Shown piece by piece: positions 52,902-64,000 of a stretch of 64,000 bases of DNA (position 1 is the stretch's first letter; each line of letters starts with the position of its first letter). The notes under the pieces are model-generated. The model saw only the letters and a program-made list of their open reading frames with translations. It ran no database searches and had not been told where the DNA came from. A program made the translations under genes and the position numbers. Location of the stretch: the NCBI GenBank assembly GCA_977016875.1, contig CDRNST010000382.1, positions 1,736,001 to 1,800,000 on the forward strand, read 5' to 3'. This DNA is from Pavona decussata (lineage: Eukaryota).

Positions 52902-54902
52902 TTAAGAGGGAATGTCTACTAACACCGAGCGAGGGGTGGCACATGATAAAAAGTGAAAGTCCGTCACAAATTGACTAAGGATACCCTATGGTAGTTCTAG
53001 TAATGTGATGGTTTTGATTTCTCGGAATTCTTTTTTTAACCCAGAAAAATTGAATAAAATCTGTTCGGGCCCATTAGTGTCTATAAAAGCACCCAAAGTA
53101 GACGTGTCCCATACCTTCTCTCAACTTCGCTCTGTTTAATTCGCATCGATAAAAAACTCATTTTAAGCTTGGAAATGTGCAGTTGAAGTGTTTACGAATC
53201 GTTTGAGGCCAATAATAGATCTCTGCTTTAGTTTTGAGGGTCATGGGGAAGGTACCGAAAGTTACTAAAATTGGCTCAGTCGAAATTCTCAATTTGGCGC
53301 ACTTTTTCAGGAGAGAGTTTCCCTATCCGGTAAAACACCAAATCACTTGAAATTTAGAATTCTTGATTGACGAAATGCCGTTCTAAAACCAGGTTTAAAA
53401 ATCAGTTTCGGGCTTTCTATCAGTGCTGAGAACTAACGCTCTCAAAATCCCGATAATTGCAACATTATCTGTCAAGAACTGTAAGCGATACACATGTTGT
53501 TTCTGTCAAAATCAACTAAGACTTTTGTATTTTTTTTTGTTGTTTCCCTCAATATTACGATGAACCAAACAACAGAAAGCTCATATTTAGCTCACCTTGA
53601 ATAAGATGTCATCTAAGTATCAGTTTCTTGGCTTAGTGTACCACACAAAGCCATCATAGCTCGAAGGGTTGATAATTGATCTCCTTCAGTGACCAATGAC
53701 TTCTGCTATCGCATTCACGTCACTTGGCAAATGCCAATTGAAGGGGCAAAATCCTTTCACGGTGACAAAACCCTGTCGGCTCATAGAAAATATTAACAGA
53801 AATATCTAATTTTAAAGTTCTCCACAGTCATCTCAGAAACTGCCGGACTTTATAATCTTCCGTCTTCGACTGTTTTTGACTGTACTTGTTTCGGTCACGC
53901 AACGGCTTCCTTCGGAGTGATTGGTTTTTCTTACATATGGCCAAAAACGAAAAAAAAAATTCCAAACATCAGGGCGCCTGAAACTAGTTCCTTTAAAGTT
54001 ATTTGAACATGCAAACGTGACTGTTCACGCATTAACGCGGCTTTTGAATTTCTCCGTGAACACTGAGTGATCGATTCAGGTTGTTTATTTCACGACGGTC
54101 ATGGCGTGTGCGTGAATGGTTTATTCAGCAAAGATAATTACTTGAATGATGTTTTAACGAGAGGAAATTGAACAGATACCGGTAGAAGGTGATATAAGAA
54201 AATTTTGAATTAACGAGAACTTTTTCAGTTTCTCAACCAGAATGACGTTCGTTCTTTTCGCATTTGTCGGTTTGCCAACATAAATAGCAGCTATAAACAA
54301 GATAAAAGATATACAGACAGATAAAGAGTTCCGTTAACAGTACCTGATAAAGGGTTGGGTGCATCAATTCTTCGTTAACAAGATCTTTAAAAAAGTTCAG
54401 TTTTCTGTTTAATTGTTAATTTTCTCTGATCTGTAGCACTTGTTTTTTTAAATGTGTTTATTTTAGTTACAATGATCTGTTGTGTTCTTATAAACACCGC
54501 CGTTGTTCTGATTGAAACAATTACCAAATATACAAAATTTCTATATTATAAAACACTTGTAGTTTTTTGTATTTACGCCGTGTTTAAAGAATTTTCTGAT
54601 GATTGCAATCATTCTAACGGCCATTTCGGTCGTGGGTCCGTGCACGTTTCGGCCATTCAATATTTTTGGTTTACTTTTCCTAGATAAAGAACAGAAAACA
54701 GTAAAATCGATACCTTATTTTTTTTTCTTTTCTTAGGTATCTCAAACGATCAAACTGTTTTGGCTTGCAACATATCCTTCTCTACATTTTCATAATTTTG
54801 CACTGTAAACAACTGTTTGAGTTCATGGAAAACGCCCAAATGTCCTAAATTTACTAGAAAATCAAAAGACAATTTCTCCTTTGGCAAATGCAGGAGTCAT
54901 TA

Positions 54903-55395
54903 AACGAAAAACGAAAAAACGGAAGTCAACTTCCGTTTTTCCTTTTGTCTTTTTTATGTAAACAAAAAACGAAAAACGAAAAACGGAAGTCAACTTCCGT
55001 TTTTCGTTTTATGTGTAAACGAAAACGAAAAACGAAAAAACGGAAGTCAGCTTCCGTTTTTCCTTTTGTCGTTTTGTCGTTTTATGTGTAAACGAAAAAC
55101 GAAAAAACGGAAGTCAGCTTCCGTTTTTCCTTTTGTCGTTTTGTATGTAAACGAAAACGAAAAACGAAAAAACGGAAGTCAGTTTCCGTTTTTGCTTTTG
55201 TTGTTTTGTGTGTAAACGAAAATGAAAAACGAAAAACGGAAGTCAGCTTCCGTTTTTCCTTTTGTTGTTTTGTGTGTAAACGAAAACGAAAATCGAAAAA
55301 CGGAAGTCAACTTTCGTTTTTCCTTTTGTCGTTTTATATGTAAGAGGGAATGAAAAAAAAAATCGAAAAACATGCGTTAACTTCCGTTTTTCTTT
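54903..55395 (+). repeat. Left-arm array: ~8 units (~60-65 bp) each with palindrome AAAAACGGAAG-TCA(A/G)-CTTCCGTTTTT
   Basis: Directly visible; mirrored on the right arm. Confidence 0.92.
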
Positions 55396-55574
55396 TACCT
55401 AAAAACTAGATCTTTTTTGTTTATCGTTTTTTTGTTTTCGTTTAAAATGCATGCGGGGTGAGGGCAGGGAGAGGCGGTTAGGTGAGGGGGGTGGGGTGAT
55501 ATATAGCTACTAAGAACGCGGACGACTTGGGGCGATTTGAGTGTGGTGCACCAAAGGAGTCTGGCTCTAATCCA

Positions 55575-55627
55575 GGATTGGCCAATGTAGTACTTTGATT
55601 GGCATTTTGGTTGTGTAAAAATTGGCT
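55575..55627 (+). promoter_or_regulatory. Candidate promoter of the RING gene: clustered CCAAT/ATTGG boxes
   Basis: GGATTGGCCAATG, TGATTGGC and AATTGGC lie 35-90 bp upstream of ATG 55662. Confidence 0.4.
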
Positions 55628-55661
55628 CAAGCCCGCTAAACTGCATCTTGTTTCATGCATC

Positions 55662-58600
55662 ATGGACGGGTTCAACGTGTACAGGACATACATTCTTTGG
55701 CGCGGTCAGCAAAGAGTACACTTCACAGAAGATGACATAACAGCTGATAGAATATCGGCAGTTTTTAGAGTGAGTAGTGTATTTTTGAGTTACCTTCATT
55801 GTCAAATCATCTCCTTGAATGTTGCTGGCTTACGTTGGAAGTGACATTAACCTTACGTACGCTTGTGCTGTTTAATACTTGGGAATTGCGATTCTATTTA
55901 AAAACCGAAAGGGGTTTTCCTCGGTCATAAAGGATTTGGTTACAAAATTCTGTAACATTCAAGACCCATTTGAAGTGGTAACTGCAAACAAATTGAGGAT
56001 TTTACGAAACGCGTTCCTAAAAATACCGCTTAAGCTGAGATAATTTTTAACACAGTTTACGTTTTATCAAGCTATTAATTGGTGATCTGTTTTCGCAATG
56101 TTTGTAATTCCATATTACAAGCGCATTACAAGAATAAAGACATTGAAAATATGTTCGAATTTCGTAAGATACTCTTGGCGGGAAAATGTTCAGTGTTGTT
56201 GCCTAGCACGTGACCATCCTGTTCTCTGATTTTCTTTTTCCGTAAGATCTCAGAATTCCACGGTTGTGACTTTTGTCAAAAATTTCACGTTTTATCAAGA
56301 ATTATGTATTTAGATTTATTAGTAGATTTCCGCCGATATTATTCAGATGTAATCATTTAGGAGTGAGGAAGGAAGCCATGCAGAAGTAAATTTTGAATTG
56401 CATAGATTTCCCACGCGGCAAAGCCTTATTTGTGGTTGCCTAGCACGTGACCATCCTATTCCCTGATTTTCCTTCTCTGTAAAATCTCAGAATTCTACGG
56501 TAAAACATTTGCCAAAAATTTCACGTTTTATCAAGTATCAAGTATTTAGATTTATCAATGGCTTCCGTCGATGTTATTCAGATGTAATCAGTAAGGAGTA
56601 AGAAAGGAAGGAAGCAGTTCACGAGTAAATTTTGTATTGCAACTATTCCCACGCGGTAAAGCCTTATTTGTGGTTGCATCATTGGAACTTTTAGATTTGC
56701 TATCGTTTCGGCGTATAATCTTGTAAATTACAGCGGTTACCAATAACACGCGACCTATCGCCTTCAAAAGACTCCGATAAAGTTGCGTTTTGGTGGACGT
56801 CAATAAAAGAAAAGCCCTTGAAATTAATATGAATTCTGAGAACATTTCAAGGCAACAGAACGAAGAAGTTGACAGTTTTATCCGCTGACGGATGGTAAAC
56901 TTTATGAAAGCTGATTTCTAAGACAGGCTATCTCAAAAATGCGCATTGTTTAGACGAAGCCGTATTTTTTTCATGAAAGATTTAAAATCACCACACCTGA
57001 CAATTAAATCGGCGATCATGCAAGTGAGCAAAGTATCCGCGTGCAGTGAAAATCGAAATTTTTAAAACCTTTTATTTGCGCTTGATCTGGATGGAGAATC
57101 AATTCAAATAAAGTTTACCTTCTCTTAGCGAGGTAAAATTCTTAGTTTCTTGCAGGATTACCTTGGAATCTTGTCAGAATTCAAAATAATTTAAACGGCT
57201 TTTCTTTGATTGACGTCTACCAAAACGCAACTTTATCCGACTTAATGAATGCCGTAGGTCACGTGTTATTGGTAACCGCTGTAATTGTTATTGTCCCTGA
57301 AAAGTCCTCTGTAAAGGAAATTCATTAAAGTTTGTATTGTATTGTTGCCTAGCGCGTCCCTATTTTTCTGCCCGACACTTGATCCCGAAATATTATTATA
57401 TTCTTGGATATTCAATAGGTCCGTCTACTATTTGCCATAGAAATTAAAATACTTGAGCGTCCACAAATAATGGTTTTCCTTAAGTTTTAGAAAATGCACT
57501 CGTTAGATTTTTTCCATTTTTTGTATCCAAAAAAACTAACAAAAAAATGACATAGTGACGCTGCTTTCATGTAATTTTAACAGAGAGATCCCCTGTAAAT
57601 GTTGGTTTTGCACTTTCATGTTTTTTGAAGATACCCTCTGTTAGATTTTGGGTTTTTTTTTGTAGGCGAGTTACGCTTTAAGAGAACTGTTGTTTGTAAA
57701 ATTTCACGAAATTCTAACGAGCGGTTCCTTAGAAAACAGTTAATTTTCATTAAAACGACCAGTCACAATTTTTTGGTCAAATGCGCATGCGTAGCTTTTA
57801 ATTCGGTGTTCTCAGCAAAGATGAAAAGCGTGTAAAAAGGCTTAGCTCTTCGTGAACTCACTTTCTTTGTTCGGTGATAAATGAAGAAGGATTCACAAAC
57901 GCGAAACTAAGTTATTTTAAGAGCAAAACTCACCTTTGTGATCCATTTGGTATAAAATCGAGGGATCGATAGTATTTGCTTACCACAACCCTAGCGCGCG
58001 CTTAATAGCATCACTAACAGAATCTGTAAAGCGCACGCAAACTGTGTTCGGCCACCTTAAATGCTCCGTATATTTACACGTTTTTTCAATTTTGTTAATT
58101 CTTAGCTAGTTTTTATTGTTCTTATTTGTTTATTTGTTTGTTTGTCACTTTTTCAAAATTTTCTATTATATCATGTACCATTTTCAGTTGGGAATTATTG
58201 ATGGTTGGCGATAAAACCAGGAACACGGAAAATTGCGGAGCAACATCAAAGAGCATGAAATAGAATGAAATCAATTGATGAAAAATATAGAATATATCTA
58301 TGAAAACTGAGTATAAGACAAACTAAATGATAAAAAATATAACATCGGCTCTACTAGAATGAAAGAAAAATCTTTGTGTAAAAAAGGTTTTGTTCTGGAG
58401 GACATCCGGCCACAATTGTGCAAAGGCTCAACTTTTCCCGCCAATTTGGTCACATGCCTTGCCGACTGTCTTGTTTTTCTTCTCCGCAAGGATAGGAGCA
58501 GTCATATTAATCCCTTTACTAACACTTTTTTAATTGCACACCTGCACACCTAATATTGATATATGTTTGCAGCCGATAGCTACACATATACACGGCTGTA

Positions 58601-60037
58601 GTTTTTTGTGAGTCTATAGGCCGTTCTCAATACATGTCAAATTGCGTATGTTTCCAGGTTGAGCGAAGTAGCCTTTACCTCCAGGAGGACTTCAACAGGG
58701 TTGCCCGGTTCCCGAACTCTTCCGGCAGTTTTGACACAACAGTGTGGCTCGACAGAACCTCTTTAGAAGTTATGGGGACTGAGATAGGTGCCAACAATCC
58801 ACTGAACGTTCAAATGCCATCACCTCAAGAATTTGGTATTATGAGCATGCCTGGTACCAGCACTTCTAGTACCAACGTCACACCCGCTTCCCGTAATCAT
58901 CTATCGACTCCTAATGCGTTTTCTCTTCAGAAGCCCAAAGCACCTGGGGAGCTTCGGAGAAAAGTTTTCTATGCTGAGTTTGACGCGGACAGTTCGAACC
59001 CCGTTCCGACGGGCACAGCATATTTAAAACTTAAACCCGAACAGTGCAAAGTGACAGAGGTTGCCCAGTTGTGTAAAGAGTACCTGAATATGGAAGATGA
59101 TTTGGTTATCATAGATACAAATGGATTTGAGATCCTCGACAACCCAAGTACTCGAGGTAAGAACCAAACAGTTTTACCCCTAAAAAAACATTTCGCTTAC
59201 GTTTTCATATGTAGTTGAATTGCACGGAAAATTCTCTAGGGCTATTTAAAGAATAACACAAATTCGTCTTCCTAATATTGAGTATTGTTCACCATTAATT
59301 TAATTCTGCTTGATTTTAATTGCTCACACTACGTTATAGACATCATTTGTGGGTAAGCCACTCTCTAAAATCTAACCGGAAGGACTGACTCCTGATAGCT
59401 GCCCTGCTGAACTCAGTTAAAGTGCTAGCCATCATTGGTCATGGTTTGAAGTTTTTTTTTTTTCCAAACTAACGTGTTGCTGGGAGCAAATAAATGAAAC
59501 AGTTTCGTAAACAAGCTTCAACCACGCACTTTTTAAAAGTTTTAATTGATTATTTTGTTGCATTTCGTTAAACTAGGGCCTGAATTCTGGGGGAAGGGCT
59601 CTATGAAAGTTTACGCCGTTAAAGAGGTGGAGTACGAGCGAATAAAAATAAAGAAGGCAAAGACAGCGAACAGGTTGGCTAAAAGCAAACGGGGTTACTC
59701 TTCATCAATCGCCGAATATACCAACAACAACTTGATTCTTGACAAACTGGACGAAATTGAGGGTTCTATAGAGCGAAACGCCAAGTGCTGCAAAAGATTG
59801 CACGATTTGGACAGAGCACTAGTTGCAGCATTTAAATGCACCATTTGCCTCAACACTACGCCTGCCCAGAGAATTGAGTATGCGGGTTGCTGTGACCGTC
59901 TCGTTGCGTGTGTAGACTGTGCGGATGAATGGTACAGGAACACCGCATCGTGCCCACATTGCAGGGATGAGGATGGCCGTAATAAGAGGAGACGGGCCCG
60001 TGGCTTCAAAAGTGTTGTTGAACTAATCGAAAATTAA
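55662..60037 (+). CDS. RING-finger putative E3 ubiquitin ligase, 355 aa; exons 55662-55769, 58658-59156, 59577-60037
   Basis: All introns are GT-AG and phase-compatible (phases 0 and 1), with no stops. Coiled-coil followed by CTIC-x11-CC-x5-CVDC-x10-CPHC (RING-like). Confidence 0.82.
56196..56680 (+). repeat. ~240-bp tandem duplication in RING-gene intron 1
   Basis: TTGCCTAGCACGTGACCATCCT..ATCTCAGAATTC..AAAAATTTCACGTTTTATCAAG..ATTCAGATGTAATCA occurs twice (~56199 and ~56436). Confidence 0.85.
56731..57281. mobile_element. Tc1/mariner-type MITE (551 bp) nested in the RING-gene intron
   Basis: ~75-bp imperfect TIRs starting CAGCGGTTACCAATAACACG; TA at 56729-30 and 57282-83. Confidence 0.87.
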
Positions 60038-60142
60038 GTTTATGTTGTTTTCCTTGTAAAAAAAATTGCTGTAGGTTCTTGACTTACTCGTTGACGACCA
60101 GTTTGTCCTTATTTTTTGTTCCCGTTGAAATTGAACTTGAAA

Positions 60143-60430
60143 AGTCCAGTTCCGAATTCACCAAGACCGCTGGAAAAAAAGAGAAAAGACGCATTTATTC
60201 AGGATTAGCCTCAATATGAAGTAAAATATTAACAAGTGTTAGCAGGAAAGTGCTAAATCTGTGGGAAGATGAACTTTTCACAACTCTGTGTATTGATTTA
60301 TTTTAGGATTCAGCACTTTATTTCCTTCTAACATTTGTGAATATTTTGCTTCAGATTGAGGCTAACCCGGTATAAATGCGTCGTCCTTTGTCTTTTCATC
60401 CAGTGGTCTTGGTGAATTCGAAACTGGACT
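60143..60430. repeat. Fold-back (hairpin) element with ~115-bp arms between the convergent 3' ends
   Basis: AGTCCAGTT.CGAATTCACCAAGACC.CTGGA..GACGCATTTAT..TTAGCCTCAAT.TGAAG.AAAATATT is mirrored in 60305-60430. Confidence 0.85.
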
Positions 60431-60883
60431 ATTATTCAGAGGTTTTTCTTCTGAGTTAAAGCAACAGTGTAAAGTTTTCGTTGCAATTTAGTGCCAGTTG
60501 TTCCATTTTATTTCCTTTAGGATTTAACTTGATTCATATTTACAACAATGAATCAAATGGATGTTATTTAACAGAACAACAATAGAGAGAACAACGCAAA
60601 AAAACCTATCGGAAACATGCAAAAAATTCCTCTATTTGTAAAATTACCAATCACTTCATTACTCGTATAGTAATGTAAAAGTGCGTTCCTGTTATTTCAA
60701 TAAAAAAAATTTGCTGAATATGACTTTAACGTGTCATAAAGCAGTTTTGACATAAATCACACAATACTCCTCTACCAACAGTATGGGTCATGTGATGGTA
60801 CGAGAAACTTATCACCAACTAAGACCAGAAAGTGCGAATAATTTGTTTGATTGCCACATTTCTAAGCACGAAAACAATAAAAA

Positions 60884-62511
60884 TTATTGGCTAGAAAGGT
60901 ATCTTGTTAGCCGAATATAATATAAAATGGCATTTCTAAATAACGCATGGTTGTCATTTGCAATTGCTTGAAATATGGTGTCAATGCGGGGAAACTGCCT
61001 TCTGAATTCTCTTTCCCTGGCATCCTTTTTCGCCGGCTGCTGCCTCAGAGTATCAATTCCAAACTTCTGTTCTGTAGTCAAAGTCCCATTGTACATCTGC
61101 ACAGCTGCTTGAGGTGCGGGTACAATACTTGCGTCGATATTAACAGCCCTATTGTTAGTGCATCTTCTTTCCAGTGGAACACCTTTCCCCGTATAACAAA
61201 GAACGTTTTAGTCAGAGGGAGCGCAGAATTATGTTTGCATATTCACTGTGACAAATTTCAATAAATCTGGCGATATTTTTTCATCACCACAGAAGCACGC
61301 TGTTTACTTATAAAATGATATAGTTTATCTTCTTCAAGCTACCTGGGATAGGATGTGAATTCCACGAACTGACGGCATATTGAAGCCCAACTTCTACAAC
61401 CTGTCTTGTGACCCATGAGACGCAGTATTTGGTCACCTCATCTTCCATGTCAATAGTGCCCTCATTTTCCATCTGGACAAGAGCGCGCTTTATGGGGAAG
61501 TTAGTCCTGCTGTTCACTTCTACCCAGAGTCGTTCCACGGCATGATTCTATGCAAATTGAAATAAAGGAAAATACGTCTGTCTTGTGTCAAACAGAGAAA
61601 ATGGATAATTCCTTCACAACCCTGGGTCTCAACCGGCATAATCATGGTACGGCGGGGGTTTGCTTTCTTCAGTTAACATTCCGCATAGTTAGTAATCGTT
61701 TGTATAAATTATAAGATAGCCAATAAAGCGGTTATTCCAGCTACGTGTTGTACCTTTGTAGCAGCCGGATATACGGCAGCTGGAAAGAGGCGTCATTGCC
61801 AAGATTTATTCAGTTCTACGACTACTTTCTCCAGATGAACGCAATTACCTGCCTTGACTGTGTCTGTAGGTAGGGCTGCCTTGAACAGTTGTGACGTCTA
61901 TTTTTCAAAACATCTTGAATAAACAACACCAGCAAGAATTCCTTCCCATGATCAACTCTTATCTGATCCCACATGCCATAACGAAGAACAGTTTTTCTAG
62001 AAGAAGATACAAGGTGTTTTATCATAATATAAGCTACGAGTTCACCTTTTGCTTGATTTTGTTATTTTAAAGCTATAAACATGAGAGAAATGTTACTTCA
62101 GTTTAAATTAATTTAAGATAGGAAAAAGCTCACCTGAAAACTTCCTCGTAGATAACAATGTTGTTTTTCAGGGCCATTACCGACGTAGCAGTGATAAACG
62201 AACTATTACCATCAACAGCAATAACTTCTGTCACACCATAGCGAATCAGTTTCTCGTTTTGGTCAAAATGAAGTTTATGGCCAAAGTATTCGGCATAATA
62301 AGGTATTGGATTCAAATGACGGTTAGTTGAAGTTTGCCGTTCTTGATGGTACTGTGGATTGACACGTTTAAGTGCTTGTCCAACTCTGTTTACTCCTATT
62401 TTCAGGCCTCTTGAATGCCTGATGTGCCCCGTCATCATTTTTCTTCCATAAGAAGGTCCAACCTAACATAGAGGTAGAAAGTAGAGACCCCATAAAACGA
62501 CGCCTGATTGC

Positions 62512-62564
<53 letters not shown>

Positions 62565-63181
62565 ATAGTAGTAGTAGTAGTGTACCAGAACCATTTCCAG
62601 TAGCAGTAGAAGTGGCAGTATTATGTTCATGCGAAACTTAAAGAAGCCATTGCCCACTTTCGACATTTCGTGAATTTGATTAGCTCTTATTCTAAATACG
62701 TCCGAAATGAAGTTGCCTGAACCTAATTTATCATCGTTTTCTCCATACACAGTGTCTTTTACCACTGATGCATTTTACTACAGATCAAAATGGCTGCAAA
62801 TTCGCATGAAAGAGCCAATACTCTTTGAAAAGATTAACAAGTTTTTCCTAACATGGAAAGAAAACTGAACCGATTATTCTCCACTGTTGAATTCACTACG
62901 GGAAATGGGTTAGAACGAAATTTAGGGAAAATTGAAATAAGCTTACTAACCTCAGCAACCGCCGACAAGACTACCGCGTCCAAATCTTCTCTCGATAAGT
63001 TACGATTACGAGAATGAATATTATTTCTCGCACAAAATCTTCGAACCGTTCTTTCAGACAACCCTACAACTTCTGGATAAACTTGCTTTAAAATTATACT
63101 TATTTCATTGTGGGTTTTCTTTTCGACTTCCACCAGTTGTCTTACATACTCAACTGCATTCATGCTTTCTAACGCGGCCAT
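60884..63181 (-). CDS. IS3/retroviral integrase-core-like DDE transposase (IS3EU-like); exons 63181-62951, 62462-62134, 61996-61849, 61547-61343, ~61188-60884
   Basis: HTH-like SERTVRRFC, GPSYGRKMMTG, FGHKLHFDQNEKL..VIAVDGNS, QIRVDHGKEF, NHAVERLWVEVN, WNSHPIPG. All exon phases match and there are no stops, but the last acceptor reads ACGG rather than ACAG. Confidence 0.85.
62513..62581. repeat. (TAG)n / (CTA)n microsatellite in transposase intron 1
   Basis: About 22 trinucleotide units, directly visible. Confidence 0.95.
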
Positions 63182-63464
63182 CTTGATTCAAAAGACCTGC
63201 CAATTTACTGTACATACTCGGAGTTTGGAACTGCTGACCAAACAGACCTCGAAGCAGCCAGGACACTGGCTAGTCTTGAGTCTAAGCACCCCCTCCCCCA
63301 ACTCCTTAGTACCCCCCCTTCTTTCTTCCCTCTTTCCCTGTCCCCATATTCGTTAATGTCTGTTAACGCCTTAGCACCCCCCAACTCCTTAGTACCCCCT
63401 TCCTGTTTCCCTCTTTCCTTGTCCCCATACTCATTGATGTCTTGTTTCTTTTCGTCAACAACAA

Positions 63465-63945
63465 AAAAGGAAAAACGGAAGTTAATGTGCGTTTTTCGTT
63501 TTTCACTCCCTCTTACATATAAAACGACAAAAGGAAAAACGGAAGTTGACTTCCTTTTTTTCGTTTTCGTTTACATACAAAACGAAAAAAGGAAAAACGG
63601 AAGTTGACTTCCGTTTTTCGATTTTCGTTTTCGTTAACACACAAAACGACAAAAGGAAAAAAGGAAGTTGACTTCCGTTTTTTCGTTTTTCGCTTTTTGT
63701 TTACATAAAAACGACAAAAGGAAAAACAGAAGTTGACTTCCGTTTTTCGATTTCGTTTACATACAAAACGACAAAAGGAAAAACGGAAGCTGACTTCCGT
63801 TTTTTCGTTTTTCATTTTCGTTTACACATAAAACGACAAAACGAAAAATGGAAGTTGACTTCCGTTTTTTGTTTTTCGTTTTTTGTTTACATAAAAAAGA
63901 CAAATGGAAAAACGGAAGTTGACTTCCGTTATTTCGTTTTTCGTT
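63465..63945 (-). repeat. Right-arm palindrome array (~8 units), inverted copy of the left array
   Basis: AAAAACGGAAG-TTGA-CTTCCGTTTTT units, followed by a unique segment that is the reverse complement of 54848-54902. Confidence 0.92.
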
Positions 63946-64000
63946 TAATGACTCCTTCATTTGCCAAAGGAGAAATTGTCTTTTGATTTTCTAGTAAATT

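What the first reader, a model, noticed from the sequence alone, without database searches (positions are those of the whole stretch)
53936..64000. Large palindrome-armed transposon pairing an IS3-like DDE transposase with an intact RING E3-ligase gene
Seen: long inverted arms enclose exactly two convergent multi-exon genes, each starting just inside one arm. One is an integrase-core transposase with a D..D..E triad (HFDQNEKL / RVDHGKEF / AVERLW). The other is an uninterrupted 355-aa protein ending in coiled-coil + RING. Known: IS3EU is a thinly described eukaryotic superfamily with two ORFs, TAY termini and 6-bp TSDs. Inference: this is an IS3EU-like family whose dedicated partner is a ubiquitin ligase, possibly degrading a host silencing factor or tuning transposase levels. 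This is the best candidate for an uncharacterised system in the window.
Basis: partly seen in the sequence, partly recalled or inferred. Interest (0 to 1): 0.85.

Follow-up and report, generated by a model that had tools for sequence, protein, structure and literature searches.

The report
Two-gene transposon carrying a RING-finger gene
This is a 9.6-kb cut-and-paste DNA transposon in a coral genome that carries an integrase-type transposase gene and a second, conserved and expressed gene for a ubiquitin-like plus RING-finger protein; the same gene pair sits inside related transposons of fishes and a mussel, so it looks like a transposon lineage that brings its own probable ubiquitin ligase.

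Summary
The element spans window 54635 to 64213, so it ends 213 bp past the window, not starting at 53936. Its inverted arms are about 760 bp (91.5% alike). Termini read GGTCCGTG..CACGGACC, with 6-bp target duplications: 5 of 6 letters match here, and three relatives have perfect ones.

It holds exactly two convergent genes, both found as spliced RNA contigs:
- a 5-exon, 405-aa DDE transposase (Pfam rva_4, IS3EU-like core motifs);
- a 3-exon, 355-aa protein with a small N-terminal module, a ubiquitin-like beta-grasp domain, a basic patch, a coiled coil and an all-cysteine RING.

The pair recurs in six loci of this genome, in other coral assemblies, in three teleost fishes and in a mussel. Gene orientation varies, but the 8-bp termini are the same in the coral, goby and sardine copies where ends could be read. 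Both genes are under purifying selection (dN/dS 0.14 and 0.18). More distant rva_4 lineages lack the partner.

So this is a distinct two-gene clade of the IS3EU/GingerRoot kind, although the TA..TA termini that define IS3EU are not met. Ligase activity and its target remain inferred. The window copy has a mutated splice acceptor in the transposase gene. The scan's first stage noted a similar element elsewhere in this genome (s1-501710).

The parts
54629..54634 (.). Left flanking hexamer GTCGTG, the candidate 6-bp target-site duplication. Its right-hand partner GTCCTG lies at 64214-64219, outside the window.
   Evidence: 5 of 6 letters match. Relatives have perfect 6-bp duplications: TACCAC, GAATTG, CTCTAG.
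54635..55396 (+). Left terminal inverted arm. It begins GGTCCGTGCACG.
   Evidence: 772-nt alignment, 91.5% identity to the right arm; termini.
54901..55396 (.). Subterminal array in the left arm: about 7 copies of a 64-bp unit, each centred on the palindrome ACGGAAGT(CA/TG)ACTTCCGT. Proposed transposase-binding sites (inferred).
   Evidence: All 20 CGGAAGT motifs of the element lie in the two arms.
55662..55769 (+). RING-partner gene, coding exon 0 (36 aa, ATG at 55662, GT donor at 55770).
   Evidence: sequence; the peptide matches the N-termini of annotated fish homologues and is found upstream of exon 1 in seven related loci. Not covered by the RNA laid.
58658..59156 (+). RING-partner gene, exon 1: the rest of the N-terminal module, an S/T/P-rich linker, and most of the ubiquitin-like beta-grasp domain.
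   Evidence: RNA contig, GT..AG intron 59157-59576; conservation; model, VIA Z 5.3 for residues 94-166.
59577..60037 (+). RING-partner gene, exon 2: last beta-grasp strand, basic patch, coiled coil, all-Cys RING, and the stop codon at 60035-60037. The transcript continues to at least 60162.
   Evidence: zf-RING_2 E 2.3e-5, below the Pfam cut-off; eight invariant Cys.
60741..61188 (-). Transposase gene exon 5 (coding part 60884-61188) plus 3' UTR. In this copy the preceding intron ends GG, not AG.
61343..61547 (-). Transposase exon 4, with catalytic E241 (AVERLW).
   Evidence: (rva_4 E 1.6e-6).
61849..61996 (-). Transposase exon 3, with catalytic D202 (RVDHGKEF).
62134..62462 (-). Transposase exon 2, with catalytic D144 (HFDQNEKL).
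62951..63197 (-). Transposase exon 1 (ATG at 63181), the helix-turn-helix-like N-terminal domain.
   Evidence: HTH_17 at E 0.065, which is weak. Clr5-type HTH in the sardine homologue, E 0.0018.
63465..64000 (-). Right terminal inverted arm with the same 64-bp palindrome array. It continues to 64213 beyond the window and ends CGTGCACGGACC.

Best explanation
Shown: this is a copy of an autonomous-type, two-gene cut-and-paste DNA transposon of the IS3EU/GingerRoot kind.

Inferred mechanism of movement:
- An HTH + DDE (RNase-H/integrase fold) transposase binds the long inverted arms, probably at the subfamily-specific subterminal palindromes.
- It cuts at the conserved GGTCCGTG..CACGGACC ends and integrates with a 6-bp staggered cut.

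Shown for the second gene: it is an integral, selected part of the element.

The second gene's product is a nuclear protein (inferred from a conserved basic patch). It has a small N-terminal module, a ubiquitin-like beta-grasp domain, a coiled coil and an all-cysteine RING. The RING keeps the usual E2-contact positions: I/V after the first Cys, W after the sixth, and a basic residue after the last.

I read it as an E3 ubiquitin (or ubiquitin-like) ligase that the element needs in order to propagate (inferred). Possible targets, with my odds:
- about 35%: a host factor that silences or restricts the element;
- about 30%: turnover or removal of the transposase-DNA complex;
- about 25%: a non-catalytic scaffolding or targeting role.

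This particular copy may be crippled, because the acceptor of transposase intron 4 reads GG instead of AG.
For: Transposon status:
- Arms and termini are defined.
- Independent insertions carry 6-bp duplications at unrelated sites, in coral (TACCAC; GAATTG), sardine (CTCTAG) and goby (5 of 6). All have GGTCCGTG termini.

Transposase family:
- Exons hit Pfam rva_4. The intronless sardine homologue scores 1.5e-13.
- Homologues are 'integrase core domain' proteins of fish, mussels, sea anemone, sponge and Acropora.
- The core motifs line up with IS3EU-1_DR in the supplement of PMC10045372.

Expression:
- Spliced RNA contigs cover both genes.

Partner is integral to the element:
- It is present with the transposase in C382, C250, C8, C114, C96 and C76 of this genome.
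- It is also present in other coral assemblies L042 and L048, in minnow, goby and sardine and in mussel.
- Between subfamilies only the exons stay alike at DNA level.
- dN/dS is 0.14 over 352 codons for the partner and 0.18 for the transposase.
- Identity rankings of the two genes agree among the coral copies.

Domains:
- The beta-grasp fold gives VIA Z 5.3 (coral exon 1) and up to 8.4 (goby protein). All 50 top rows are UBL/RA/PB1/FERM-F1 domains.
- Eight Cys are invariant, and the I/V, W and R/K positions are conserved.
- The nearest solved sequences are Mdm2, ZNRF3 and Arkadia RINGs.
Against: - No enzymatic evidence. The RING scores below Pfam's cut-off (25 vs 27.3 bits). It also has an unusual invariant CC pair where C-x-H normally stands.
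- The solved-structure sequence matches are weak (E 0.05-0.7).
- No support for binding between partner and transposase. The test gave no verdict, so it counts neither way.
- The termini are not the TA..TA reported for all complete IS3EU families (PMC10045372).
- The window copy has a GG acceptor in transposase intron 4, arms only 91.5% alike and an imperfect duplication, so it may be inactive.
- The RNA contigs differ from the window by about 1% and by a 12-nt in-frame insertion. They may therefore come from another allele or copy.
- The exon 0 junction is not backed by RNA. One contig carries an unexplained 68-nt 5' extension that is absent from the assembly.
Confidence: 0.6

Rival explanations
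1. The partner is not a ligase. It would be a structural accessory factor, like the Myb-like second protein of PIF/Harbinger elements. In this reading the RING and the beta-grasp/PB1-like domain only mediate oligomerisation, nuclear import or tethering of the transposase to the subterminal palindromes or to chromatin.
For: The RING is atypical (CC pair, below the Pfam cut-off). Beta-grasp matches include the oligomerising PB1 and DCX domains as well as ubiquitin. A coiled coil is predicted. Many two-gene DNA transposons use a non-catalytic second protein (own knowledge).
Against: The positions that contact E2 enzymes in active RINGs, and the basic residue after the last Cys, are conserved from coral to fish (their meaning is from own knowledge). 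No DNA-binding domain was detected in the partner.
Confidence: 0.25
2. The RING gene is a captured host gene carried as a passenger, as in Pack-MULE or Helitron cargo, with no role for the element.
For: DNA transposons often capture host fragments. GingerRoot elements are reported to carry gene fragments (PMC6839031). Fungal IS3EU families acquired TET/JBP genes by transfer between transposons (PMC12730594).
Against: The whole three-exon gene is kept intact inside the arms across coral subfamilies, three fish orders and a mussel. dN/dS is 0.14. The gene's identity ranking matches that of the transposase. In 1.84 billion cluster representatives the N-terminal region has only 62 relatives, and none of the loci inspected was a stand-alone host gene.
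Confidence: 0.07
3. This is not a mobile element at all, but a host gene pair framed by a local inverted duplication.
For: In this genome the window's own subfamily has a single full-length copy.
Against: Copies lie at unrelated loci, with identical 8-bp termini and 6-bp direct duplications, in several genomes. The C250-type has three copies 95-98% alike. Deletion derivatives keep the arms (L006).
Confidence: 0.01

Closest known systems
[quoted passage not shown] 2019, PMC6839031; Kojima and Bao 2023, PMC10045372)
   Same: - Integrase-type DDE transposase without an HHCC zinc finger, with an HTH-like N-terminus.
- Core motifs align with IS3EU-1_DR.
- 6-bp target duplications and terminal inverted repeats.
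- Occurs in fish, corals and molluscs.
   Different: - Termini are GGTCCGTG..CACGGACC, not TA..TA (or TAYGG..CCRTA in fungi).
- Arms are 0.46-1.1 kb, against 30-150 bp.
- The transposase matches Pfam rva_4 only weakly, while more than 150 other loci of the same genome match it strongly.
- It has a constant UBL-RING partner gene, which no paper I could search mentions. Repbase entries themselves could not be read.
Fungal IS3EU families with accessory genes (alpha-kinase, TET/JBP dioxygenase; PMC12730594)
   Same: Same superfamily. A second gene lies in opposite orientation to the transposase inside the inverted repeats. It is proposed to help the element escape host silencing.
   Different: The accessory genes are a kinase and a dioxygenase acting on DNA methylation, not a RING/UBL protein. 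The hosts are fungi.
RAG1 / ProtoRAG (Transib-derived) recombinase
   Same: A DDE transposase associated with a RING E3 ligase activity. ProtoRAG also has two convergent genes between inverted repeats (own knowledge; PMC1131882 and PMC4411706 for the transposon origin).
   Different: In RAG1 the RING is fused to the transposase. The transposase fold family (Transib) and the 5-bp duplication differ. There is no sequence relationship to the proteins here.
Two-gene DNA transposons with a required non-catalytic partner (PIF/Harbinger Myb-like protein; MuDR mudrA/mudrB; CACTA TnpA/TnpD). Own knowledge.
   Same: A transposase plus a second element-encoded protein, often convergent or divergent inside the inverted repeats.
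   Different: Those partners are DNA-binding or of unknown fold. None is a RING/UBL protein.
Transposon- or virus-encoded ubiquitin-system enzymes (OTU and ULP1 proteases in Ginger1, Helentron, MULE and CACTA elements; herpesvirus ICP0 RING ligase). Own knowledge.
   Same: A mobile element brings its own enzyme of the ubiquitin or SUMO system. ICP0 is a RING ligase that destroys host silencing factors.
   Different: The transposon examples are proteases, not ligases. ICP0 is viral and unrelated in sequence. No target is known here.

Membership tests
IS3EU/GingerRoot superfamily | DDE transposase of the integrase/IS3 type with the superfamily's core motifs | tested here: met
   Exons hit Pfam PF24764 rva_4 (exon 4 at 1.6e-6). 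The intronless sardine homologue scores 1.5e-13. D144, D202 and E241 sit in motifs that align with IS3EU-1_DR: H-x-D..KL..YG, DG-x-S, NN, IR-x-DHG-x-E and N/Q-x-x-ER-x-W.
IS3EU/GingerRoot superfamily | 6-bp target-site duplication | tested here: met
   TACCAC (C250 copy), GAATTG (L048) and CTCTAG (sardine). The window copy shows GTCGTG/GTCCTG and the goby GTATTG/GTATCG, each 5 of 6.
IS3EU/GingerRoot superfamily | TA..TA (TAY) termini, stated to hold for all complete IS3EU families (PMC10045372) | tested here: not met
   The termini are GGTCCGTG..CACGGACC in coral, goby and sardine copies.
IS3EU/GingerRoot superfamily | Transposase falls inside the IS3EU/GingerRoot clade in a phylogeny with Ginger1/2, IS481EU, IS3 and integrases | not tested
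   Repbase and GingerRoot protein sets were available only as text in a paper supplement, not as files, so no tree was built.
RING-type E3 ubiquitin ligases | Eight zinc ligands with cross-brace spacing | tested here: inconclusive
   Eight Cys are invariant from coral to fish, spaced C-x2-C-x11-13-CC-x5-C-x2-C-x10-C-x2-C. However, a CC pair replaces C-x-H. Pfam zf-RING_2 scores 25 bits against a cut-off of 27.3. PDB RING matches have E 0.05-0.7. The RING was poorly modelled.
RING-type E3 ubiquitin ligases | E2-dependent ubiquitin transfer | not testable with these tools
   Only conservation of the usual E2-contact positions (I/V, W, basic residue after Cys8) can be shown.
Ubiquitin-like (beta-grasp) domains | Beta-grasp fold: a mixed sheet wrapped around one helix | tested here: met
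   In the coral exon-1 model, residues 94-166 have pLDDT about 90 and VIA Z 5.3 at rmsd 2.2-2.9 A over 57-63 residues. In the goby full-length model, residues 114-207 reach Z 8.4, with ubiquitin itself at Z 7.3-7.5. All 50 top rows are beta-grasp domains. Foldseek alone found nothing at E<=0.001.
Ginger2/TDD and Polinton (other integrase-type elements with 6-bp duplications) | TG..CA or AG..TC termini; H2C2 zinc finger or a DNA polymerase gene | tested here: not met
   The termini are GG..CC. There is no further conserved ORF inside the element, and neither HHCC nor polymerase hits appeared.

The most novel reading that the evidence does not exclude
This would be a transposon lineage found in cnidarians, molluscs and teleosts, either ancient or horizontally spread. 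It would depend on its own RING E3 ligase, which marks a host silencing or restriction factor for destruction. That would make it a transposon counterpart of herpesvirus ICP0, and the first stand-alone E3 ligase known to be an obligate DNA-transposon gene.
Probability: 0.2. Interest if true: 0.85.

Novelty: new variant of a known kind. Interest (0 to 1): 0.62.

Why it matters
IS3EU/GingerRoot elements are among the least studied eukaryotic DNA transposons. Recent papers say their structure and function are largely unexplored (PMC11934779).

This report defines a clade by four features:
- conserved 8-bp termini;
- 6-bp target duplications;
- kilobase-scale arms;
- a constant second gene for a ubiquitin-like + RING protein that is expressed and under purifying selection from corals to fishes.

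If the partner is an active ligase, it links transposition directly to the host ubiquitin system. It also gives a concrete handle, in the form of substrate identification, on how a DNA transposon copes with host silencing or clears its own transposase.

Young copies exist, for example the goby element with 99% identical 916-bp arms. That makes a transposition assay with and without the partner feasible.

In public databases all these proteins are labelled 'uncharacterized', so the result also corrects annotation: they are transposon genes, not host genes.

Tried and rejected
- **Fetching all paralogues.** The C8, C114, C96 and C76 copies were therefore studied only from ~3-kb loci.
- **Foldseek (PDB)** with the coral exon-1 model gave nothing at E<=0.001. 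The fold came from VIA-align instead.
- **Complex prediction** of the sardine transposase with its partner gave 'no answer' (score 0.00). It counts neither for nor against binding.
- **Rfam** gave only sub-threshold miRNA-hairpin hits on the palindromic arm repeats and on the 60206-60366 hairpin. I read these as palindromes, not RNA genes.
- **Pfam** on partner exon 1 and on the full-length fish partners found no domain apart from weak RING hits.
- **Goby terminus.** I first took an internal GGTCCG in goby locus L046 for the terminus and found no duplication. A second goby copy, L052, showed the true ends further out.
- **Correlation of pairwise identities.** Across all seven loci the correlation between the two genes' pairwise identities is weak (Spearman 0.47), because the distant RING matches are only 5-50 residues long. 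I use only the rank order among coral copies.
- **Unexplained 5' extension.** The 30-nt end of the extension on one RNA contig was sought in the window and in the whole assembly and was not found.
- **Literature.** Searches for IS3EU or GingerRoot together with RING or ubiquitin, and for transposon-encoded E3 ligases, found nothing relevant.
- **Joined gene models.** The spliced models were never sent to a search or fold tool. Searches were done exon by exon by reference, or with intact homologues (sardine intronless transposase, annotated fish partners). Joining was done only inside scripts, to check frames, lengths and residue positions.
Full report
**What is there**

The window is G000:C382:1736001-1800000 of a 602-Mb assembly. 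The genome is most likely a stony coral. Coral-labelled metatranscriptomes share its repeats, and the transposase has Acropora and sea-anemone relatives.

The inverted repeats seen inside the window are cut by the window end. After fetching the next 6 kb of the contig, the two arms align over 772 nt at 91.5% identity. They span 54635-55396 and 63465-64213. The element is therefore 9,579 bp, not 53936-64000.

It begins GGTCCGTGCACG and ends CGTGCACGGACC. The flanking hexamers are GTCGTG and GTCCTG, matching at 5 of 6 letters. The inner two thirds of each arm are about seven copies of a 64-bp unit centred on a palindrome with the core ACGGAAGT..ACTTCCGT. All 20 CGGAAGT motifs of the element lie in the arms.

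**Gene models**

Contigs from two runs of the same organism span the introns. The run type is only guessed to be RNA, but spliced contigs are only expected from RNA.

One 1383-nt contig joins 63197-62951, 62462-62134, 61996-61849, 61547-61343 and 61188-60741 on the minus strand. Introns 1-3 are GT..AG. The spliced frame from the ATG at 63181 is open for 405 aa. The D, D and E of the quoted motifs fall at 144, 202 and 241, with spacings of 57 and 38.

In the window copy intron 4 ends GG, where two related coral copies have AG. The contig differs from the window at about 1% of positions. It probably comes from another allele or copy, and this copy's transposase gene may be splice-defective. A cryptic in-frame AG lies 6 nt downstream.

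A 1099-nt contig joins 58656-59156 to 59577-60162 (GT..AG). It carries an in-frame 12-nt insertion relative to the window.

The first coding exon of this gene is 55662-55769. The evidence is threefold:
- the annotated fish homologues start with the same peptide;
- the exon ends at a GT;
- it is found upstream of exon 1 in seven related loci.

The exon 0 junction itself was not covered by the RNA laid. One contig instead carries 68 foreign letters before 58656 that are absent from the whole assembly. This is unexplained.

The joined proteins were used only inside scripts for frame, length and position checks.

A six-frame comparison with four relatives shows no further conserved coding segment. 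There are exactly two genes, convergent, each starting about 270 bp inside an arm.

**It is a transposon**

Other copies lie at unrelated sites with the same ends and 6-bp direct duplications:

| Copy | Size | Arms | Flanking duplication |
|---|---|---|---|
| C250:623708-633478 (this genome) | 9,771 bp | 463-467 bp, 94% | TACCAC, perfect |
| L048 (another coral assembly) | 10,051 bp | not measured | GAATTG, perfect |
| Sardine (Sardina pilchardus) | 11.1 kb | more than 1 kb | CTCTAG, perfect |
| Goby (Knipowitschia caucasica) | 6.5 kb | 916 bp, 99% | GTATTG/GTATCG, 5 of 6 |

All of these copies start GGTCCGTG and end CACGGACC.

The C250, C8 and C114 copies are 95-98% identical over introns too. 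Deletion derivatives exist: a C104 fragment, and C201, which keeps the arms and RING exon 2 but has no transposase.

**The transposase**

Its exons hit Pfam PF24764 (rva_4, integrase core) weakly, with exon 4 at 1.6e-6. The intronless sardine homologue scores 1.5e-13 and also has an HTH (Clr5) N-terminus.

Its relatives are 'integrase core domain' or 'uncharacterized' proteins of many fishes, Mytilus, Exaiptasia, Acropora, Clytia, Amphimedon and others. This is the taxon range reported for GingerRoot (PMC6839031).

The core of Repbase IS3EU-1_DR, printed in the supplement of PMC10045372, aligns motif by motif with the exons here. That paper shows IS3EU and GingerRoot to be one lineage with 6-bp duplications and TA..TA termini. 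Fungal IS3EU end TAYGG..CCRTA.

So the catalytic core and the duplication length fit, but the termini do not, and the arms are much longer than reported.

The genome holds at least 151 strong rva_4 matches, many as intronless 470-520-aa frames. The window's element is a divergent branch of that superfamily.

**The partner**

Exon 1 has no Pfam family. A profile of it finds only 62 cluster representatives among 1.84 billion. The annotated full-length ones are fish proteins of 340-359 aa labelled 'uncharacterized'.

Structure predictions give a confident beta-grasp domain:
- residues 94-166 of the coral exon 1: pLDDT about 90, VIA Z 5.3;
- residues 114-207 of the goby protein: Z up to 8.4, with ubiquitin at Z 7.3-7.5 and rmsd about 2.5 A.

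All 50 top rows are UBL, RA, PB1 or FERM-F1 domains. Foldseek alone gave nothing significant.

The rest of the protein is laid out as follows:
- upstream of the beta-grasp lies a small, confidently modelled N-terminal module of unknown fold and a disordered S/T/P-rich linker;
- downstream come a conserved basic patch, a long helix (coiled coil) and the RING.

Eight cysteines are invariant from coral to fish, spaced C-x2-C-x11-13-CC-x5-C-x2-C-x10-C-x2-C. Also conserved are an I/V after the first Cys, a W after the sixth and a basic residue after the last. By my own knowledge these are the positions active RINGs use for E2 binding and activation.

Against that, the RING is below Pfam's cut-off (25 vs 27.3 bits), its PDB matches (Mdm2, ZNRF3, Arkadia) are weak, and the CC pair in place of C-x-H is unusual. 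'E3 ligase' is therefore an inference.

**The pair belongs together**

In this genome the partner's N-terminal region occurs at 12 places. Six of them lie next to the closest transposase relatives:
- C382, C250, C8, C114 and C96, convergent;
- C76, divergent.

The rest are degraded or isolated fragments.

Outside this genome, the two genes lie together in the following loci:

| Locus | Organism | Arrangement |
|---|---|---|
| L042, L048 | coral assemblies | all exons present, convergent |
| L043 | coral assembly | transposase decayed |
| L047 | fathead minnow | convergent |
| L046, L052 | goby | divergent |
| L049 | sardine | divergent, intronless transposase |
| L053 | Mytilus edulis | convergent |

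A pike transposase of a more distant lineage (44% identity to the sardine one) has no partner within 10 kb.

Between coral subfamilies only the exons of both genes remain alignable at DNA level.

Between the window and L048:
- the partner has dN/dS 0.14 over 352 codons;
- the transposase has dN/dS 0.18 over 294 codons; exon 2 was left out because L048 has a frameshift there.

The partner diverges about 2-3 times faster in protein sequence: 84, 63 and 41% identity where the transposase keeps 93, 87 and 81%. The ranking is the same for both genes.

This rules out a passenger gene or a host gene pair. No stand-alone syntenic host orthologue was seen, and every full-length copy of the clade has the partner, but more distant transposase lineages lack it.

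**Mechanism**

Shown:
- a two-gene transposon clade;
- expression and splicing of both genes;
- selection on both genes.

Inferred:
- the HTH domain binds the subfamily-specific subterminal repeats. CGGAAGT palindromes are present in the window/L048 type and absent from the C250 type, and the N-terminal exon is the least conserved of the transposase exons in the L042 and L048 comparisons;
- the DDE core cuts at the conserved 8-bp ends and integrates with a 6-bp stagger;
- the partner acts in the nucleus as a RING ligase for the benefit of the element.

Its target is open. I rate a host silencing or restriction factor slightly ahead of transposase/transpososome turnover, because the partner evolves faster than the transposase. 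A non-catalytic scaffold role is the third option. The one complex prediction (sardine pair) gave no verdict.

**Comparison and novelty**

The closest known kind is IS3EU/GingerRoot, though membership fails on the terminal dinucleotide. Fungal IS3EU carry other accessory genes in opposite orientation: an alpha-kinase and TET/JBP.

RAG1 couples a DDE transposase with a RING, but in one polypeptide and in another superfamily. Transposon-borne OTU and ULP1 proteases, and the viral ICP0 ligase, are functional analogies (own knowledge).

No searchable paper links IS3EU/GingerRoot with a RING or ubiquitin gene. Repbase records could not be read, so a prior curator's note cannot be excluded.

I rate this a new variant of a known kind, of moderate to high interest.

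Earlier notes of this scan:
- the predicted 1.5-kb arms and CTTACA duplication (s1-501827) are contradicted;
- the 26-bp palindrome arrays (s1-501828) are confirmed;
- a similar element was noted on another piece of this genome (s1-501710). This fits the paralogues found here, but I did not check which one it is.

Noticed in passing
window 57890-58062: A ~172-bp interspersed repeat sits in the first intron of the RING gene. The first look found 913 candidates genome-wide, and the scored ones are 95-98% identical. It has very high depth in coral metatranscriptome contigs. It looks like a young SINE- or MITE-like family.
   Followed up: partly
window 60173-60397: A hairpin (77-nt arms, 81% complementary) lies between the 3' ends of the two convergent genes. 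It is covered at high depth in the coral RNA contigs. It is probably a small nested repeat, though it could also act as a two-way terminator. The RNA contigs together cover 60133-61048 apart from short gaps, so the two transcripts may overlap.
   Followed up: no
window 61189-61190 (minus strand): The acceptor of transposase intron 4 reads GG in this copy but AG in the related coral copies L048 and L042. A cryptic in-frame AG lies 6 nt downstream.
   Followed up: yes
window 58656 (RNA contig of run X1): One contig carries 68 letters before 58656 that occur nowhere in the assembly, even allowing 2 mismatches. In the gene's frame they contain a stop codon. Possible explanations are a trans-spliced leader, an individual-specific exon, or a chimeric contig.
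   Followed up: partly
window 62513-62581: An (AGT)23 microsatellite lies in transposase intron 1. It creates the spurious poly-Y ORF in the ORF list.
   Followed up: no
L039 2387-2849 (G000:C250:622886-623348): A second terminus of the C250-type element points the other way, 359 bp from the full copy. Two elements or fragments therefore lie end to end.
   Followed up: partly
L006 (G000:C201:25028-28221): An internally deleted derivative of the window's subfamily. It keeps arm sequence and the RING exon 2 region (86-89% identity) but lacks the transposase.
   Followed up: partly
L050 5942-6487 (G000:C436:6849441-6849986): A divergent 181-aa relative of the partner's N-terminal region lies between ~370-bp inverted repeats. 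No RING exon or transposase was detected nearby. It sits next to retrotransposon reverse-transcriptase fragments.
   Followed up: partly
G000 genome-wide: There are at least 151 strong matches to Pfam rva_4, many as intact intronless frames of 470-520 aa in near-identical copies. Other IS3EU-like lineages therefore seem abundant and recently active in this coral.
   Followed up: no
L047 3303-8303 (Pimephales promelas): A ~5-kb palindromic tandem array (96-97% self-complementary) lies upstream of the minnow partner gene. It may be the expanded arm of that element.
   Followed up: no
protein P0187: A relative of the partner's N-terminal region is filed in NCBI as a hypothetical protein of a Gammaproteobacteria MAG, on a 5-kb contig. 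This is probably animal DNA binned into a bacterial genome.
   Followed up: no
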